Shown: piece after piece, positions 38,946-46,700 of the stretch
Layout of the letters: the number at the start of each line of letters is the position of its first letter
Numbering within the stretch: the stretch's first letter is position 1
Program-made: the position numbers and the translations under genes
Assembly (NCBI RefSeq): GCF_040938485.1
Contig: NW_027271462.1
Coordinates: forward strand, 186,001 to 250,000
Direction: 5' to 3'
Length of the DNA: 64,000 bases
Origin: Diadema antillarum
Lineage: Eukaryota
Notes under the pieces: generated by a model
What the model saw: only the letters and a program-made list of their open reading frames with translations
Databases searched by the model: none
What the model was told of the DNA's origin: nothing

Positions 38946-39257
38946 TTATCGTTTCGATGAAGGAGAGTCCAAACGACAAAGAAGAATATCTAGGAGCGTT
39001 TGGCGGAAGAGGGGCTGAGTGATGACGTAACAGAAGGGATTGAGGATGCTGTTGGTGTACCGCAACCAGACGAAGGTCTGCAACAGCGGACCGGGGAGGT
39101 TGGGCGGTAGGATGAGGGTTGGACGAACCGAATAGCAGACAACCACGATACTTTGGGGCAGCCAGGCGATCACCATGGAAACGAAAATGAGAGTCAAGGT
39201 TCGAGTGGCCCTGGTCGCCTCGGACGTAGACTCTCGGTTCTTCACGCTATGTTTTTC
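38946..39257 (-). CDS. Same GPCR, exon 2, TM6-TM7 and C-tail (total 421 aa)
   Basis: Acceptor tag|GAA phase 0; RATRTLTLIF..AWLP (TM6), WLRYTNSILNPFCY (NPxxY), F..TL..IL.C helix 8. Confidence 0.92.
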   Translation of the reverse strand, partial: EKHSVKNRESTSEATRATRTLTLIFVSMVIAWLPQSIVVVCYSVRPTLILPPNLPGPLLQTFVWLRYTNSILNPFCYVITQPLFRQTLLDILLCRLDSPSSKR

Positions 39258-41158
39258 CTATAACAGGAGAAAGTGAGAAAACTTGTTTTTTTCTTTTTCA
39301 TTTTGACTTAATGTTGCTCGTCATCTAAATTCAGTTACTGTCTTTTTCCCCTCAACGAAGGAAAAGCACACTAATTGTATATAGAAACTAAGTTGCTTTA
39401 CCATGTGATTTTCCGGTTTGGTCATATCTCTTGTTTTTTTCGCGAGTCAAAATAGTTTGGTTTTTTTTTTCACACGTTCTCATTTTCTTGTATTCTTTGT
39501 TTGTCGACTGTTGCTGTTGTTGTTTTTGGTTTGGATTATAAAGCAGTTATTTTCTTTGTCAATAGTAGAATTTCACAATTTTTTCGTCATCTTTGTATCA
39601 TAACTCTAGTCACGAAGAAATATTTTGAAAGAAGCTGTGCGACGAAATCGCGATCAAATAATCTCTGTGCGGCATTCATTATTTCAATCAGTGACATTAC
39701 AAAACCTACACTGTTTTATAAATGAACACTATTAATAAAGTGACATTTCGTTATGCGCAAATTGTTGTAAGAGATATCCTAAAACCATTAGGCCTATGTG
39801 CTGTAAGATCACCTTTATTTTCGAAATGTCAAAGCAGTCTGACTTGTTGAAACATGGATAATCGCGTTACCATGGCAACGTTTTGTCTGCTCAAGGCCGA
39901 GTCATCAAAGATGCCTTGCGATATCCATCACCCTGGAGAAATACTTTCAATTACTCCTTGATCAGTGTTGATGGAGTGTAATGAGGTGATGTATATTCTT
40001 CTTAAAGCCCTTTCTCTGCATTCTCTCGTAAACAAGGTTGATACTATACTCCTGATAGCAAAGATAGCAGTGTCTGGGATGAAACATTGCTGCAAGAAAG
40101 GGAGGGAGCGATTTCTACGTTGTGAGTGTGCATGTAATGTCATCAGAGCAACTATAAGGACGTTCAAGTTCAAGTTCAATTTCGAATTTATTCGTTTTTC
40201 CACAAAAAAAAGTGATATAAACATAAATCTCACTTTCTTGAGTGAGAGGAACAATGCATGTAAATTTGTACGAAGAAAACAACAATAATGGGAAAAACTA
40301 ACAGTATCAATACATTGCAATAGTTGCCGAGGTAACGAAAGTGAAAGAATTGTCAATATGCACTGTGTGAAAAAAAACCGGAGGGGACGTCGTGAATGTA
40401 CCCATAGATATGTAAATGATGCTGAGGTTGTGCATAGACAGTAAAAGACAGCTATTTATGCATATAAATGTATTGTAAAAAATAACGTCCCAAATAGATT
40501 TTACGGAGCCGAAAATAAAATCAAGATCGAAGAAGAAAGGGAAAAATGGAAAGAATCTGTTATCTCTTTGTGCTATTCCATCTCATATTGTACAAGCTTT
40601 GCAGATCAGATCTGATCTCTTGTTGGTGGGTGGTTTTATGGTAGAACATGCATTCTTTGATATGAGTGCGATACTTAAAAAGACCTACTTTTTTCCGAAG
40701 TTTTGACGAGTGTGCTCTTACGGCGTCCTTCGGGAAATGAGTGGTTAGTTGGAGTTAGACTTTTACTGTACTCAGCCCAACTTTTCCACTAACCACTGAT
40801 TCATTCTGAATCTATTGTGATGTGTTTCTCTGTTATAATATATTATGCACGGACTTGCAGAATAACAGCCAGTGGCTGAGCAAAGTCCTTTTATCACCGT
40901 GTTGAAGTAAACTGAAATGAAAAGGAAAGGAAATTAAAAACATGCTTACAAATCGTCGATATTGAGTAAGTCCTTCCGTTTCAGGATCACACTTACAATT
41001 AAGAAAGAATGCATGGTGTAGAGTGAAACCAACCATCACTAAATGTTCTGCAAACGAAAATCTTTAATGGTTCTCTTTCAGCTTATCATTTATTCGCTGA
41101 CTCTATTCGTTGTCAAAGTAAGTACAATTTTTTATTTCTTTAAAGAAATAAGAGGACA

Positions 41159-41475
41159 GGGGTAGCTGTGGCATAGTGTTTGAGACTTCTGACTCCCAAT
41201 CGCGAGACCCGAGTTCGAATCCCGCCCAGTGCTTACGTCCCTGGACAAGATGTTTTTACCCACCATGTCCTTCTCGACCCAGGTGTATAAGTGGGTACAT
41301 GGCAACGCTAGGGTAATAATAATGGCAGAGCCCTCTTGTAGAACAGCGGTAACACTGAAGAGGCTACCCTAGATGAATAAGATATTATTGTTATTATCAT
41401 CATTATTATTATTATCATTATAATTATCATTATCATTATTATTATTATCATTATTATTATTAGTAGTAGTAGTGG
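41159..41475 (+). mobile_element. tRNA-derived SINE
   Basis: Pol III A box TGGCATAGTGT (41169-79), B box GAGTTCGAATCC (41211-22), central GTCCCTGGACAAGATG...CTCGACCCAGGTGTATAAGTGGGTAC domain, (ATT/ATC)n tail. Confidence 0.8.
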
Positions 41476-42628
41476 TATTAAAGTCGGCAAATTGTTGTTG
41501 GCATTCGACGACAGATTGTCAACCAGTTTTGTCGGCTGGAGGTATTAAGTGTTACATTGAAAACCATCAAACCATTTACGGACCAATTTGGAAGGCAAAG
41601 GATATAATCGGTCTTTTATTGGTCGTTTGAATGAAGGTCGCCGACCTCTTCAGGAATTGTTTTCAGTGATTGCCGGCCCTTAAAGTTGCCGACCAATTAA
41701 CGATTGCTAGCTAACCATTTGCCAGGTGGTCGCCAACCAGAAAACAAGAACAACAACCACTTCCAACTTGTTGTAGATCCTGGAATCGCTTGAAGAGTGC
41801 CCGCGTCTACATGCCAGGGTACTCTGAATTGGTGCTCATACATTGGTCCACCCCTTCCTCCCCAAAAAGAACGACAAAGACCATAGCCGCAAATCCCGAA
41901 CTCCAAATTTCGAAATATGTTTTTAACACCGATTTTGACATTATTACAGAGAATAGATGAACACGAAGTCCATCATAGGGATTCGATTATATTAACATGT
42001 ACTTGTATGTGGTACGATGGAGTGGGCTCTAGTATTGTCAAATGTTCAAGTTCAAGTTCATTTTATTGCCTCAGATGGAACCAAAGATAAATTCAAAAAG
42101 GCGAACCAGGCGATCCATGAATAATGCTTTCTGTAATACTATGGGCCACTGACTATCATTAATCCATGAAGAGCTAGTATCTTAGATTCTTTCTCTTCTT
42201 ACTTCCTGTCCAACCATCAACCCTCTGTGTGCCACATTCATTTTATTTCCGTAAGCAGATAAGTAAATAAAATTCGTGCATATTTGATTCAATGGCACAG
42301 AAAGGATTAAAGCCATGATCGGGAGTTCCCCGAGTAGGATTGATAGAACGGTCCTACATCTGTTTAGTCTTAAACCTTTCTGTGCCACAGACTTTGAACA
42401 GTGCGTACAACGCTGTGGGGGTTTCTGTGTCACTTGGTATCCTAACAACACAAAAGGTATACACTTTGGATTGTTGCCGAAAGCAGTACGGCCTGCGAAC
42501 CTCAACAACAAATCGACAACAAATTGCTAGTGTTTTTCATAAAGCGCTGAACAGTAACCGGCAATTTGGCAACAATTCTGCGAGCAAGTGCCAATTGATG
42601 ATCCCTTTTTTTACGTATATCCCTTACG

Positions 42629-45318
42629 AAAAAGTCCTGTGGTACTCCTGTGGTAATTACCACAGGACGGTACCACAGGACAGTACCACAGGACAGTACC
42701 ACAGGAAAGTACCACAGGACAGTACCACAGGACAGTACCACAGGAAAGTACCATATGCAGGACAGTACCACAGGACAGTACCACAGGAATTGTCCTGTGG
42801 TATTTTGGGACATACCACAGGACAGTACCACAGGAATTCCTGTGGTATTTCGGGACGTACCACAGGGCAGTGCCACAGGAAAGTACCACAGGAATTCCTG
42901 TGGTATTTTGGGACGTACCACAGGGCAGTACCACAGGACTAGTACCACAGAACAGTACCACAGGAACTGTCCTGTGGTATTTTGGGACAGTACCACAGGA
43001 CAGTACCACAGGTCGATCATTACCACACAGCATTACCACAGGGCAGTACCACACAGCATTTCCATGGTACCACAGGAGAGTACCACACAGGATAGATCGA
43101 AAAAAAAAATCTGGGAGAATTTTAGCCACATATCAAGGAATATTCCTGATAGGTGAGTGATGGATTTCAGGACAAACATGGCCCTACTTAATAACCTGTC
43201 CTACTCCTAACATGTAACCTCAAACGAGAGTCTAATGGCTAAGTGCCAATCTAGTCCTATAATAGATCTATATAGTCATATTCTATTCCTAGGTAGCCAT
43301 CGACCGTATCAGTACATATATATATGGCCGTCTATCCGTAAAGCATTAAGGCATGGTTACTAAATCGATTATACTTTATTATCAAGATATGAAATTACAT
43401 TTTCTTAACAATATCTATGATATTGGGAATAACATAGCATAATTAGACAATCTTTCATAAAGTTCAAAGTAAGTTCCATCATTAATACTTTGACTTTTTA
43501 AGTCATATATGTATTTTCTAAAATCTAGAGTGCTTTTTATGAATATTCATGAGCTATGTAAAAATTTGTACCACAGGAGTACCACAGAAGTCCTTATGAA
43601 ATTTCTCATGCTTTACATCAGCACTTTTACTAAATAGGTAATACTGTATAGGAGTATAGGACAGGATAAGTAATGGGAAATCAATTGTTATAATTCATAG
43701 CATAACTCATCTATCAATTAATTGAGGAATATTAATATGTGCTTTTTTTTGTTTGTATTTTTGTTATAAATATCAGTTGATTCTGCCTTACAATTTTCCT
43801 GTGTGGTACTCCTGTGTGGTACTGCTGTTTGATATTCTCCTGATGTGATAGTCCTCTGGTATAAAATGTTAAGAAAAAAAAAAAGAATATCCTGTAGCAT
43901 TTTTCTGTGGTACTTACGAATTTAATTTGCTGTGTGGTACTTCTGTGTGGAATAGCACCATATTATGATTTTCCTGTGGGATTTTGGACAGTTCCTGTGG
44001 TACTCCCCTGTGGTATACATCGAAAATTACCACAGGAATTCCTGTCATACTGTCCTGTGGTACGTCCCAAAATTCCACAGGACAATTCGTGTGGTACTGT
44101 CTTGTGGTACGTCCCAAAATACCACAGGACAAGTCATGTGGTACTGTCCTGTTGTACTGTCCTGTGGTATGTCCCAAAATACCACAGGACAAGTCGTGTG
44201 GTACTGTCCTGTGGTACCATCCTGTAGTACTGTCCTGTGGTACTGCCCTGTGGTACGTCCCAAAATCCCACAGGACAAGTCGTGTGGTACTGTCCTGTGG
44301 TACTATCCTGTGGTACTGTCCTGTGGTACTGTCCTGTGGTACGTCCCAAAATACCACAGGACAAGTCGTGTGGTACTGTCCTGTGGTACTTTCCTGTGGT
44401 ACTGCCCTGTGGTACTGTCCTGTGGTACGTCCCAAAATACCACAGGACAAGTCGTGTGGTACTGTCCTGTGGTACTATCCTGTGGTACTTTCCTGTGGTA
44501 CTGTCCTGTGGTACTGCCCTGTGGTACGTCCCAAAATACCGCAGGACAAGTCGTGTGGTACTGTCCTGTGGTACTTTCCTGTGGTACTGTCCTGTGGTAC
44601 TGCTCTGTGGTACTGTCCTGTGGTACTGCCCTGTGGTACTGTCCTGTGGTTCGTCCCAAAATACCACAGGACAAGTCGTGTGGTACTGTCCTGTGGTACG
44701 TCCCAAAATACCACAGGACAATTCCTGTGGTACTGTCCTGTGGTACTATCCTGTGGTACTTTCCTTTGGTACTGTCCTGTGGAACTACCCTGTGGTACTG
44801 TCCTGTGGTACGTCCTAAAATACCACAGAACAAGTCGTGTGGTACTGTCCTGTGGTACTATCCTGTGGTACTTTCCTGTTGTACTCTCCTGTGGTACGTC
44901 CCAAAATACCACAGGACAATTCATGTGGTACTGTCCTGTGGTACTGTCGTGTGGTATACGTCCCAAAATACCACTGGACAATTTGTGTGTATACTGTCTT
45001 GTGGTACTGTCCTGTGGTACTTTCCTGTGGTAATGTCCTGTGGTACTGCCCTGTGGTACATCCCAGAGTACCACACGAGCCTGTGACACAGTACCACACA
45101 GTTCCTGTGTTAAAATATATTTCTGTGGTACATTGTGTGTTGGTACCAACCAGTACCACAGGGAGTACCACATGAGCCTGTAAAACAGTACCACACAGTT
45201 CCTGTGGTAACATTTATTTATGTGGTACAGTACCACACAGCTCCTGTGGTAACATTACAAGTGTGTGGTACATTGTGTGGTACCGACAAGTACCACAGGG
45301 AGTACCACAGGACTTTTT
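42629..45318. mobile_element. Foldback-like element: long inverted arms of 13-bp (TACCACAGGACAG) tandem units around an AT-rich spacer
   Basis: Termini AAAAAGTCCTGTGGTACTCC / GGAGTACCACAGGACTTTTT; units mostly in one orientation at 42657-43090 and the opposite at about 43790-45060; spacer about 43090-43790. Confidence 0.8.
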
Positions 45319-45509
45319 TGTTAGGATGTTGATCGCAAGGCGTTCTGTAGTTTGCAAAACGTTGGCAACTATCGGTAATCATTCGGCAACTAATCGCCCA
45401 TCAAAACATGTCAGAATTGTTTATTTTGTTTGTCAAAAGTTGGCACTGCTTTTTGATTTGCTTATGTGGTCGGCGACTAGCCTTCGTACAAGTGTAAACG
45501 ATGCCTTAC

Positions 45510-46463
45510 CTTGGGTGTGTCCAATACGACTTCCTTTGGTGTTTCTGTAGTCTCTACGTTGCTACCAGACTCTTGGGTCTTGAAAGTGACCATCTCACTT
45601 ATTTTTCTCTGCGCATTTTCACCGTTGACATCGTTGTCGTCGTCGTCAAAGCCTGCGTCGTCGATAGCAAATGATCTAGCGGACTCGGGCTTGACGGTCG
45701 CCGCCCCGTCCTCTGCGGTGAAGCGTTGTCCGTCCGTCGACACGTCCTTCGAGAACATCTTCCTGACGAACCTGCCCCCGATCACCTGGCGTATCTTGAT
45801 GTAGATGCGAAGATAGAGAACGGCTACGACGACGAGCGGGAGGAAAAAGGAAAGGCAGATCGACACGATGGCGGGCACGGTTTGGCGGGCATAGCCAGCT
45901 ATGCACTGACTCGTGTTGTCCACGTCGACCGCGAAGTCCCATCCGGTGCAGTAGGAGAGCCAGAACCCCCCGCACAGGAGCCAGGTTAGGCCGTTGGCCA
46001 TCAGCGCTTTGCTCCTGCTACGCGACGTGTAGTGCTCGATGGGATGGTACGTCGCTTGATGGCGATCGATGCAGATGACGACCACGGTGATGACGGACAC
46101 TGTGAAAGCCACCTCGCGGACACCAAGGTAGACTCGACAGGCAGTCGTGGAGAAGGGGAATTCCCTCTGGTAGGTATGGATGATCGTGACGACGAGAAGA
46201 ATTCCCACGAGGACATCGGACACGACCATGTTTATTATGTAATAATTGTTGTAGGTGCGAAGTCGTTCTCGAGCCGCAAACGCAGCCAGGCACAGCGAGT
46301 TGACGAAAATGATGACCAAGCAGTAGATAGACGCGAGAATCATACCTTCCATATTTGTATTTTCTCGTAAATCGTCTCTCACGGGCTCTCGTACGGTGAC
46401 GAATTCCTCGACGATTTCAGTGACAAGAAGTGTTGTCAGATTAGTTTCGCTGATCGTCGCCAT
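45510..46463 (-). CDS. Class A (rhodopsin-like) GPCR, aminergic-like (muscarinic/histamine-type) orphan; exon 1, TM1-TM5 plus ICL3
   Basis: 318 codons: TM1 N (FVNSL), NNYYIINM..SD (D2.50), C3.25, DRH at 3.49-3.51, W4.50, FFLP..LY; donor AAG|gtaagg. Confidence 0.93.
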
Positions 46464-46700
46464 GGGAATTAGATCTCAACACGGTCTAGGCAGGTACGCT
46501 TCTCGTTCAGCACCAGGTTATCAGTGGCACGGTTGTACGTCCTCAACTCGTGGACAAGAAACTGATATTGAAAGAACAAATACGCAGTGACCATGTCAAA
46601 AAGCAAATACATTTGAATTATCTTACAAAACAAAGAGAGCTAGCAAGATGAGAGAGTCAGAATTATAGAGACAGAGATAATATGGCAAAGCAGCGGATGA

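What the first reader, a model, noticed from the sequence alone, without database searches (positions are those of the whole stretch)
42629..45318. 2.7-kb foldback-like element built from a 13-bp unit with internal mini-hairpins, inside the GPCR intron
Seen: matching inverted termini (AAAAAGTCCTGTGGTACTCC); arms of many TACCACAGGACAG units in opposite orientations; and a roughly 700-bp non-coding spacer that holds stray units (43570). A recurring higher-order block, GTCCCAAAATACCACAGGACAAGTCGTGTGGTA, is itself a near-perfect hairpin. The arms are very unequal (about 0.45 vs 1.5 kb), implying arm-specific array expansion. Established: sea urchin TU elements and Drosophila FB elements have modular inverted arms made of short tandem repeats. 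Inference: this is a non-autonomous foldback family whose unit is a transposase-binding site. The GPCR pre-mRNA would carry a long dsRNA/cruciform-forming structure. I could not find a target-site duplication.
Basis: partly seen in the sequence, partly recalled or inferred. Interest (0 to 1): 0.7.

Follow-up and report, generated by a model that had tools for sequence, protein, structure and literature searches.

The report
Polymorphic foldback transposon in GPCR intron
This 2.7-kb stretch is one copy of a gene-less "foldback" jumping gene with several hundred copies in a sea-urchin genome; it sits in a receptor-gene intron on only one of the two assembled chromosome copies, so it is real but a fairly ordinary kind of mobile DNA.

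Summary
The element spans window 42621-45325.

It has three parts: a 475-bp short arm, a 690-bp non-coding middle and a 1,540-bp long arm. The arms are built from a 13-bp unit, GTACCACAGGACA, in opposite orientations.

It belongs to a dispersed family:
- The terminal 20-mer occurs 979 times in the 1.75-Gb assembly, against 0 for the control.
- 33 of 38 listed terminus pairs lie 2.6-3.9 kb apart.
- 13 of 16 copies have matching 2-bp flanks of any sequence.

The short arm is constant across copies. Only the long arm varies.

The second haplotype contig, and contigs from two sequencing runs, lack the element at this site, so the insertion is polymorphic.

No copy encodes a protein, and I found no autonomous partner. 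The 2-bp duplication rules out membership of Drosophila FB/Mutator, Galileo/P and piggyBac, and also sea-urchin TU if my recollection of its 8-bp duplication is right. ISL2EU-like or CMC-like enzymes remain the best guesses.

The transposase-binding role of the unit and dsRNA formation in the pre-mRNA are inferred, not shown. The scan has noted other foldback families in this genome, but not this one.

The parts
42619..42620 (.). Left copy of the 2-bp target-site duplication (AT)
   Evidence: Direct reading. The same 2-bp rule holds in 13 of 16 copies.
42621..42658 (+). Left (short-arm) terminal inverted repeat, starting CCCTTACGAAAAAGTCCTGTGGTACTCC
   Evidence: Aligns with the reverse complement of the right end over about 38 nt with 2 substitutions and 1 indel. 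It is identical in other copies. Junction contigs of other copies end exactly at 42621.
42621..43095 (+). Short arm: 28 cores of the 13-bp unit (22 inward, 6 flipped). It includes perfect 22-bp palindromes at 42646-42667, 42826-42847 and 42884-42905.
   Evidence: Its length is constant (440-485 bp) in 7 copies.
43096..43785 (.). Non-coding AT-rich middle segment with two stray units at 43569-43590
   Evidence: No meaningful ORF and no Rfam family. The genome search gave at least 816 first-look candidates; the 39 scored copies other than the window's own are 92-97% identical. This copy differs by 1.3% from the family majority.
43786..45325 (-). Long arm: 84 cores (66 in the arm's main orientation, 18 flipped), organised in higher-order repeats of 34+13n bp. 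The distal roughly 280 bp (45044-45325) is a distinct domain of variant units.
   Evidence: Length varies from 1.47 to 2.70 kb between copies, and higher-order periods differ between copies.
45289..45325 (-). Right (long-arm) terminal inverted repeat. Its reverse complement reads CCTAACAAAAAAGTCCTGTGGTACTCC; the consensus has one more C at the tip.
   Evidence: Contigs of other copies end at 45325 or continue as ...GTTAGGG.
45326..45327 (.). Right copy of the 2-bp target-site duplication (AT)
45510..46463 (-). GPCR exon 1 (318 codons, TM1-TM5 and a long third loop), ending at the donor AAG|GTAAGG
   Evidence: Pfam 7tm_1, E = 6e-28, profile positions 2-183. Donor read.
39258..45509 (-). GPCR intron (6,252 nt) that hosts the element. 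The element makes up 43% of it and starts 184 nt from the donor.
38949..39257 (-). GPCR exon 2 (TM6-TM7, NPxxY), following the acceptor TTATAG|G in phase 0
   Evidence: Pfam 7tm_1, E = 2e-9, profile positions 190-260. Acceptor read.

Best explanation
The stretch is one copy of a young, non-autonomous cut-and-paste (class II) DNA transposon with foldback architecture.

A transposase supplied in trans, not yet identified, would recognise the roughly 38-bp terminal inverted repeats. It probably also recognises the arrays of the 13-bp unit GTACCACAGGACA behind them. It would excise the element and reinsert it with a 2-bp staggered cut that has no sequence preference. That cut produces the 2-bp duplication.

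The two ends are built differently in every copy. One end carries a fixed array of about 28 units. The other carries an array of 84-162 units that grows and shrinks by unequal exchange or replication slippage. The repeating module there is one flipped unit (34 bp) plus n direct units (13 bp each).

This copy inserted into the intron of a GPCR gene on one haplotype only.

Shown: mobility, family, TSD, architecture and polymorphism. Inferred: the unit as a binding site, the type of enzyme, and folding of the transcript into long dsRNA.
For: Family size. The terminal 20-mer occurs 491 times forward and 488 times reverse, against 0 for the reversed control. Of 38 listed inverted pairs, 33 are 2.6-3.9 kb apart. 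The middle segment has at least 816 candidate copies; the 39 scored copies other than the window's own are 92-97% identical.

Shared layout. Every copy examined has a short arm, a middle and a long arm, in either orientation.

TSD. Matching 2-bp flanks occur in 13 of 16 copies. The sequences vary: tt, aa, cg, ct, ca, at, ta, tc, ga.

Empty allele. Haplotype contig C2926 joins window 42611 to 45327 with 10 bases between. The same junction appears in contigs of two sequencing runs from different samples.

Age. Divergence from the family majority is 0.9-2.8% for most copies and 1.3% for this one.

No coding capacity. ORFs occur only inside the repeat arrays. Longer copies are explained by nested insertions or tandem dimers.

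Array dynamics. Higher-order periods equal 34+13n and differ between copies.

Precedent. Tandem repeats inside long TIRs carry transposase-binding sites in Galileo, as cited in PMC4079207.
Against: No transposase gene was found linked to these termini:
- None of the terminus pairs more than 4 kb apart in contigs C1-C74 contains an ORF.
- The top 30 DDE_Tnp_4 loci and one CMC locus contain no units.
- Genome-wide coordinates of DDE_Tnp_4, piggyBac and Transposase_21 hits do not coincide with listed termini.

The empty allele is not a clean pre-insertion site. Next to the left end it reads CGGTTGTTGTT, where the filled allele has TACGTATAT. This locus alone therefore cannot confirm the TSD.

Three of the 16 copies break the 2-bp rule. 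One fits 3 bp, one is a recombinant dimer, and one is unexplained.

All sequencing evidence came from short contigs, not long reads.
Confidence: 0.88

Rival explanations
1. The mobilising enzyme is a PHIS-type (ISL2EU-like) transposase, and the family is a non-autonomous ISL2EU derivative.
For: ISL2EU and its relatives make 0-4 bp TSDs, including 2 bp (PMC12730594 and PMC10045372). The genome holds many young DDE_Tnp_4 genes, including about 19 identical 551-aa frames.
Against: No units and no CCCTWAC termini lie within 1.5 kb of the domain match in the top 30 DDE_Tnp_4 loci. There is no DNA similarity to the element. No canonical terminus lies on contig C41, or near the two 551-aa copies on contig C7. 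Only 150 of 531 candidates were scored.
Confidence: 0.3
2. The enzyme is a CMC-type (CACTA / Mirage / Chapaev) transposase. The asymmetric subterminal arrays would be the equivalent of the En/Spm subterminal repeat regions.
For: The CMCT clade makes 2-5 bp TSDs (PMC12730594). One copy here fits a 3-bp duplication. From my own knowledge, En/Spm has unequal subterminal arrays of a 12-bp protein-binding motif in both orientations, and an A-rich 13-bp TIR.
Against: CMCT termini are mostly 5'-CA..TG-3', whereas these are CCC..GGG. Only 16 Transposase_21 hits exist. The one fetched (L073) has no units. Those on contigs with complete terminus lists (C15, C51, C70) have no terminus nearby.
Confidence: 0.2
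3. It is a piggyBac-derived non-autonomous element.
For: Its termini, CCCTTAC / CCCTAAC ... GGG, are piggyBac-like. piggyBac has 5'-CC..GG-3' termini (PMC10045372). The ends are asymmetric, and the genome holds about 30 intact 620-aa piggyBac genes.
Against: The defining TTAA duplication is absent in all 16 copies. Only 1 of 62 sites of the sister family that shares the outer TIR is preceded by TTAA. No piggyBac hit lies near any listed terminus.
Confidence: 0.04
4. It is a local inverted satellite or an assembly artefact, not a mobile element.
For: Foldback arrays are hard to assemble. No long read was examined.
Against: There are 979 terminus matches on many contigs, with the same three-part layout. 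The boundaries are sharp and flanked by 2-bp duplications. An empty allele is present in the assembly and in two runs.
Confidence: 0.01
5. The empty allele is an excision footprint, not a never-occupied site. The (GTT)3 filler would have been copied from the adjacent GTT during end joining.
For: The difference between the alleles abuts the insertion point exactly. It looks like a deletion plus templated filler.
Against: The empty allele carries the other haplotype's SNPs at 42430-42480. It recurs with those SNPs in a second sample. A 2-bp indel further left (TTTTTTTACG versus TTTTTTCG) cannot come from end resection.
Confidence: 0.15

Closest known systems
Sea urchin TU elements (Liebermann et al. 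1983; Hoffman-Liebermann et al. 1985). Details are from my own memory; the papers were not available here.
   Same: Both come from echinoids. Both are foldback transposons whose inverted arms are built from short tandem repeats around a non-coding middle segment. Both are modular and heterogeneous in length.
   Different: As I recall, TU elements make 8-bp duplications and have roughly equal arms with a 15-bp outer repeat. This family makes 2-bp duplications, has a 13-bp unit, and has arms unequal by 1:3 to 1:6. No sequence comparison was possible.
Drosophila FB / FB-NOF, and Tetris of D. virilis (PMC4079207)
   Same: Long inverted arms made of tandem repeats. The middle is non-coding. The autonomous partner is often not found. 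Repeats expand within the arms.
   Different: FB and Tetris give 8-10 bp duplications and are assigned to Mutator. This family gives 2 bp. Its arms are strongly asymmetric, and each higher-order repeat contains a flipped unit.
Galileo (P superfamily) of Drosophila
   Same: It is foldback-like, and tandem repeats inside its long TIRs carry extra transposase (THAP) binding sites (cited in PMC4079207). This is the best precedent for the binding-site reading.
   Different: Galileo makes 7-bp duplications (my own knowledge) and has autonomous copies. Neither holds here.
En/Spm (CACTA) subterminal repeat regions
   Same: Unequal subterminal arrays of a 12-13 bp motif in direct and inverted orientation at the two ends, a short A-rich TIR and a short TSD (my own knowledge, plus for TSD range).
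   Different: The termini are not CACTA. The arrays here are ten-fold larger. No CMC transposase is linked to the family.
ISL2EU (PHIS) transposons
   Same: A 2-bp target duplication, and young copies present in the same genome.
   Different: No shared termini, units or internal sequence were found with the DDE_Tnp_4 loci examined.

Membership tests
Foldback-type non-autonomous DNA transposon (structural class) | Long inverted arms made of short tandem repeats | tested here: met
   A 13-bp unit gives 28 cores in one arm and 84 in the other, in opposite orientation.
Foldback-type non-autonomous DNA transposon (structural class) | Dispersed multi-copy family with defined termini and a target-site duplication | tested here: met
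   979 terminus matches against 0 for the control. A 2-bp TSD in 13 of 16 copies.
Foldback-type non-autonomous DNA transposon (structural class) | No transposase gene in the element | tested here: met
   ORFs occur only within the arrays. Longer copies are nested insertions or dimers.
Foldback-type non-autonomous DNA transposon (structural class) | Evidence of mobility (presence/absence polymorphism) | tested here: met
   An empty allele on contig C2926 and in contigs of two runs.
Drosophila FB / Mutator-type foldbacks (including Tetris) | 8-10 bp target-site duplication | tested here: not met
   The TSD is 2 bp. The 8-10 bp figure is from PMC4079207.
Sea urchin TU elements | 8-bp duplication and roughly equal arms with a 15-bp outer repeat (recalled, not verified) | tested here: not met
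   Here the TSD is 2 bp, the unit is 13 bp and the arms are 475 versus 1,540 bp. The TU papers could not be read, so the definition rests on memory.
Sea urchin TU elements | Sequence similarity to TU1 arms | not testable with these tools
   No TU sequence was available. The unit was not found in the paper library.
piggyBac | TTAA target-site duplication | tested here: not met
   No copy is flanked by TTAA. Only 1 of 62 sister-family sites has it.
piggyBac | 5'-CC..GG-3' termini | tested here: met
   CCCTTAC... / ...GTTAGGG. The criterion is from PMC10045372.
Tc1/mariner (ITm) | TA target duplication | tested here: not met
   Only 2 of the 13 duplications are TA.
PHIS / ISL2EU | 0-4 bp (ISL2EU: 2 bp) duplication | tested here: met
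PHIS / ISL2EU | A DDE_Tnp_4-type transposase within elements that carry the same termini | tested here: inconclusive
   None was found near listed termini or in 30 loci.
CMC (CACTA / Mirage / Chapaev) | 2-5 bp duplication | tested here: met
CMC (CACTA / Mirage / Chapaev) | 5'-CA..TG-3' termini | tested here: not met
   The termini are CCC..GGG. The criterion is from PMC12730594.
CMC (CACTA / Mirage / Chapaev) | A linked CMC transposase | tested here: inconclusive
   There are 16 Transposase_21 hits. One fetched locus has no units. Several others lie on contigs with no terminus. Three loci were not checked.

The most novel reading that the evidence does not exclude
This family, together with two smaller families that share the outer 14 nt of its terminus, may represent an undescribed lineage of animal cut-and-paste transposons.

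The shared outer terminus is CCCTTAC(A/G)AAAAAG. The two sister families carry TACCATGG-type sites where this one has TACCACAGG-type sites. The lineage would combine piggyBac-like CCC...GGG ends with a non-specific 2-bp duplication.

Its transposase would not be recognisable by the Pfam models for Harbinger/ISL2EU, piggyBac or CACTA. The conserved outer TIR would be the cleavage module, and the diverged inner repeats would be family-specific binding modules.
Probability: 0.15. Interest if true: 0.6.

Novelty: new member of a known kind. Interest (0 to 1): 0.35.

Why it matters
The kind of element has been known since the 1980s, so the interest is limited to three points.

First, foldback architecture appears here with a 2-bp duplication. 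That supports the view that foldbacks arise independently in different transposon lineages (PMC4079207).

Second, the family is a clean example of arm-specific array dynamics. One arm is frozen at about 28 units in every copy. The other ranges from 84 to 162 units, with copy-specific higher-order repeats.

Third, the insertion is heterozygous in the assembled animal. The filled and empty alleles of the same GPCR gene form a built-in control. They could be used to test whether 2.7 kb of hairpin-forming DNA, 184 nt from a splice donor, affects splicing, RNA editing or small-RNA production.

Tried and rejected
Search for an autonomous partner:
- I fetched all terminus pairs more than 4 kb apart in contigs C1-C74. 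They proved to be a tandem or recombinant dimer (L031), nested insertions (L032, L033, L036, and L025 with a LINE tail), a copy with a very long arm (L034) or a truncated copy (L011). None has an ORF.
- Pfam scans of the genome for DDE_Tnp_4, Transposase_21 and piggyBac gave no units in 31 fetched loci and no coordinates coinciding with termini.
The remaining candidates could only be compared by coordinates. I did not try to obtain the same letters through another tool.
- A full census of termini was abandoned, because each pattern search lists only 100 places.

Other dead ends:
- One pattern search was wasted because terminal N positions are ignored.
- The clean empty-site pattern found nothing, because the empty haplotype differs locally.
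- The TU-element papers and Yuan & Wessler 2011 are not in the library.
- The unit sequence matches only unrelated human primers in the literature.
- Rfam finds nothing.
- Earlier scan notes hold no record of this family.
- No listed run is on record as RNA (the record does not give the kind for X3 and X5), so expression, editing and small RNAs could not be assessed.
Full report
OBSERVATION

The core TACCACAGG occurs 79 times in the 64-kb window, all between 42636 and 45311. Dinucleotide shuffles give 0.45. With one mismatch allowed there are 114 cores:
- 28 in a left arm (42621-43095), 22 pointing inward and 6 flipped;
- 2 stray ones at 43569-43590, in a 690-bp AT-rich middle;
- 84 in a right arm (43786-45325), 66 in the opposite orientation and 18 flipped.

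The commonest 13-mer is GTACCACAGGACA in both arms. Inverted matches of 70-95 nt between the arms are 88-96% complementary. TRF reports the 13-bp period and higher-order periods of 47, 60, 86 and 172 bp. It can form either of two small hairpins, at -11.3 and -13.3 kcal/mol. Three perfect 22-bp palindromes made of two units lie in the short arm.

TRUE ENDS AND TARGET DUPLICATION

One end reads CCCTTACGAAAAAGTCCTGTGGTACTCC. The other reads, as reverse complement, CCCTAACAAAAAAGTCCTGTGGTACTCC. The two ends align over about 38 nt. In the window the element is 42621-45325, and its right tip lacks one G.

Immediately outside the ends, 13 of 16 copies carry the same dinucleotide on both sides: tt, aa, cg (twice), ct, ca, at (three times), ta (twice), tc and ga. 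The window copy has AT at 42619-42620 and at 45326-45327. These are direct duplications, not inverted ones, and show no sequence preference.

Of the three exceptions, one fits a 3-bp duplication (AAT). One is a 5.56-kb dimer with only outer termini. One is unexplained.

FAMILY

The terminal 20-mer, with up to one mismatch, occurs 491 times forward and 488 times reverse in the 1.75-Gb assembly. The reversed control gives none. Among the first 100 places there are 38 inverted pairs. Of these, 33 are 2.61-3.92 kb apart, with a median near 3.0 kb.

The middle segment gave at least 816 first-look candidates. The 39 scored copies other than the window's own are 92-97% identical. In a 465-bp piece of the middle, 19 copies differ from the majority sequence by 0.9-6.7%. 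The window copy differs by 1.3%.

All copies share the same asymmetric layout, in either genomic orientation. In seven clean copies the short arm is 440-485 bp (27-31 cores). The long arm ranges from 1.47 to 2.70 kb (84-162 cores). Same-orientation cores are spaced 13 bp apart, or 34 bp across a flipped unit. The higher-order periods seen in different copies are 47, 60, 73, 86, 99, 112 and 125 bp, all equal to 34+13n. They differ from copy to copy, with 92-96% internal identity. The long array therefore keeps changing by duplication of modules, while the short array does not.

The assembly appears to hold both haplotypes, because many hits come in equal pairs. The number of distinct loci per haploid genome is therefore somewhere between about 250 and 490.

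INSERTION POLYMORPHISM

A second contig, C2926, matches the left flank (window 41452-42611) and the right flank (45327-46500) at 98% identity. Only 10 bases lie between the two matches. A pattern search printed that site as GATGATCCC TTTTTT CGGTTGTTGTT GTTGATCGT.

Contigs from two public runs of the same species label, from different samples and studies, contain the same junction with 10 letters between (records 2 and 11). The second sample also carries the C2926-type variants at 42430-42480.

The element is therefore present on one haplotype and absent from a common second haplotype. The empty site is not simply flank plus AT plus flank. Where the filled allele has TACGTATAT, the empty one has CGGTTGTTGTT. 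The empty allele belongs to a distinct SNP haplotype and also differs by an internal 2-bp indel. I therefore read it as a diverged, never-occupied haplotype (about 0.85) rather than an excision footprint (about 0.15).

In the same run data, contigs of other family copies stop matching exactly at 42621 and 45325 (tables 7 and 8). This confirms the boundaries.

GENE CONTEXT

- The ORF at 45477-46463 (minus strand) matches Pfam 7tm_1 positions 2-183.
- The ORF at 38949-39257 (minus strand) matches positions 190-260.
- Exon 1 ends at 45510, at AAG|GTAAGG, after exactly 318 codons.
- Exon 2 starts at 39257, after a pyrimidine tract and TTATAG, in phase 0.
- The intron is 6,252 nt. The element fills 43% of it and begins 184 nt from the donor.

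Folding the pre-mRNA strand of the element gives -1326 kcal/mol, against -802 +/- 9 for eight dinucleotide shuffles (z about -59). There are 412 short-arm to long-arm pairs and uninterrupted helices of up to 46 bp. This is a prediction only. No run on record as RNA covers the locus.

WHAT MOVES IT

No copy encodes a protein. Terminus pairs more than 4 kb apart in the first 74 contigs are explained as follows:
- a dimer (L031);
- nested insertions, namely a satellite-bearing element in L033, a MITE in L042, a LINE tail in L025, and non-coding inserts in L032 and L036;
- a very long arm (L034);
- truncation (L011).

Genome scans with Pfam DDE_Tnp_4 (151 hits), Transposase_21 (16) and piggyBac (116) gave no hit near any listed terminus. 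The 31 loci fetched hold no unit, no CCCTWAC terminus and no similarity to the element. The remaining candidates could only be compared by coordinates.

The 2-bp non-specific duplication excludes:
- Mutator-type foldbacks (8-10 bp; PMC4079207);
- piggyBac (TTAA);
- Tc1/mariner (TA).

It is compatible with PHIS/ISL2EU (0-4 bp) and with the CMCT clade (2-5 bp, but usually CA..TG ends) (PMC12730594 and PMC10045372). The CCC...GGG ends look like piggyBac, but no copy has TTAA.

My split for the enzyme is ISL2EU-like 0.3, CMC-like 0.2, piggyBac-like 0.04, and another or an undescribed type for the rest.

SISTER FAMILIES

Two other termini share the outer 14 nt:
- CCCTTACAAAAAAGAACCATGG occurs at 62 sites. 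The upstream flanks vary, so it is a true end. Only one site is preceded by TTAA.
- CCCTTACAAAAAAGTACCATGGCTTTACCATGGTA occurs at about 20 sites.

Their inner motif, TACCATGG(TA), shares TACCA/TGGTA with the unit here. This fits a conserved cleavage end plus family-specific binding repeats, but their structure could not be read.

COMPARISON AND VERDICT

In architecture this is a foldback element like sea-urchin TU, Drosophila FB, Tetris and Galileo. It is not a member of any of those families, because the duplication length differs. The TU figures come from my memory; the papers were not available. The best functional precedents for repeated units as binding sites are Galileo (cited) and En/Spm (my own knowledge).

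The scan had already noted other foldback families in this genome, which earlier notes attribute to the sea urchin Diadema antillarum. It had not noted this one.

The finding is a well-supported but ordinary mobile element: a new, unnamed family of a known kind. Its modest points of interest are the 2-bp duplication, the fixed-versus-variable arm asymmetry and the heterozygous intronic insertion.

Noticed in passing
G000, e.g. C146:6250-6271(+), C15:6816677-6816698(-), C62:368002(+); 62 sites in all: A second family has the terminus CCCTTACAAAAAAGAACCATGG. It shares the outer 14 nt with the element studied here. Upstream flanks vary, and only 1 of 62 sites is preceded by TTAA. Each locus shows only one such end. 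Its length and content are unknown.
   Followed up: partly
G000, e.g. C66:193770(-), C113:1650212(+), C498:30769(-); about 20 sites: A third terminus type, CCCTTACAAAAAAGTACCATGGCTTTACCATGGTA, has the same outer TIR. It is followed by two copies of the palindromic site TACCATGGTA.
   Followed up: no
L031 (G000:C7:2278709-2284664) and its duplicate at C7:2349448-2355003: A 5.56-kb head-to-tail dimer of the element with only the two outer termini and non-matching flanks (tt versus ag). This suggests recombination between two copies or between arrays. The whole structure is duplicated 70 kb away on the same contig.
   Followed up: partly
L033:1100-3727: A 2.6-kb insert sits in the middle segment of another copy. 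It carries five tandem copies of a 346-bp repeat at 99% identity and is flanked by TA. It looks like a nested satellite-bearing element.
   Followed up: partly
L042:763-1143; L025:1-930; L036:900-7400: Other nested insertions in family copies: a 380-bp MITE with AGGGATGGTACAG inverted ends; the 3' end of a LINE with a poly-A tail; and a 6.5-kb non-coding insert inside a long arm.
   Followed up: partly
G000, e.g. C795:660222, C7:2220614, C41:635911 (DDE_Tnp_4); C640:1281385, C30:8821081 (piggyBac): About 19 loci have identical-scoring DDE_Tnp_4 domains in 551-aa open frames. About 30 loci have piggyBac domains in 620-aa open frames. This indicates very young, probably active DNA transposon families in the genome.
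   Followed up: no
window 42636-45311: Every unit contains ACCACA / TGTGGT, the core of the RUNX-type binding consensus (my own knowledge). With roughly 100 units per copy and several hundred copies, the family adds tens of thousands of such sites.
   Followed up: no
window 41400-41480: The (TAT)n / 18-bp repeat at 41383-41462 belongs to a dispersed repeat. The first 81 bases of the left-flank query hit dozens of loci at 76-95% identity.
   Followed up: no
window 43089-44013: Two small runs of unknown kind (X3 and X5, about 26 million letters of contigs each) contain contigs of the family's middle segment at 95-99% identity. They also contain a piece of GPCR exon 1 (45701-45905). If these are RNA runs, the family's middle segment is transcribed somewhere.
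   Followed up: no
window 45510-46463 (minus strand): Exon 1 of the GPCR ends in a long acidic third intracellular loop (the FDDDDND stretch and its surroundings). The whole receptor is a simple two-exon gene.
   Followed up: no
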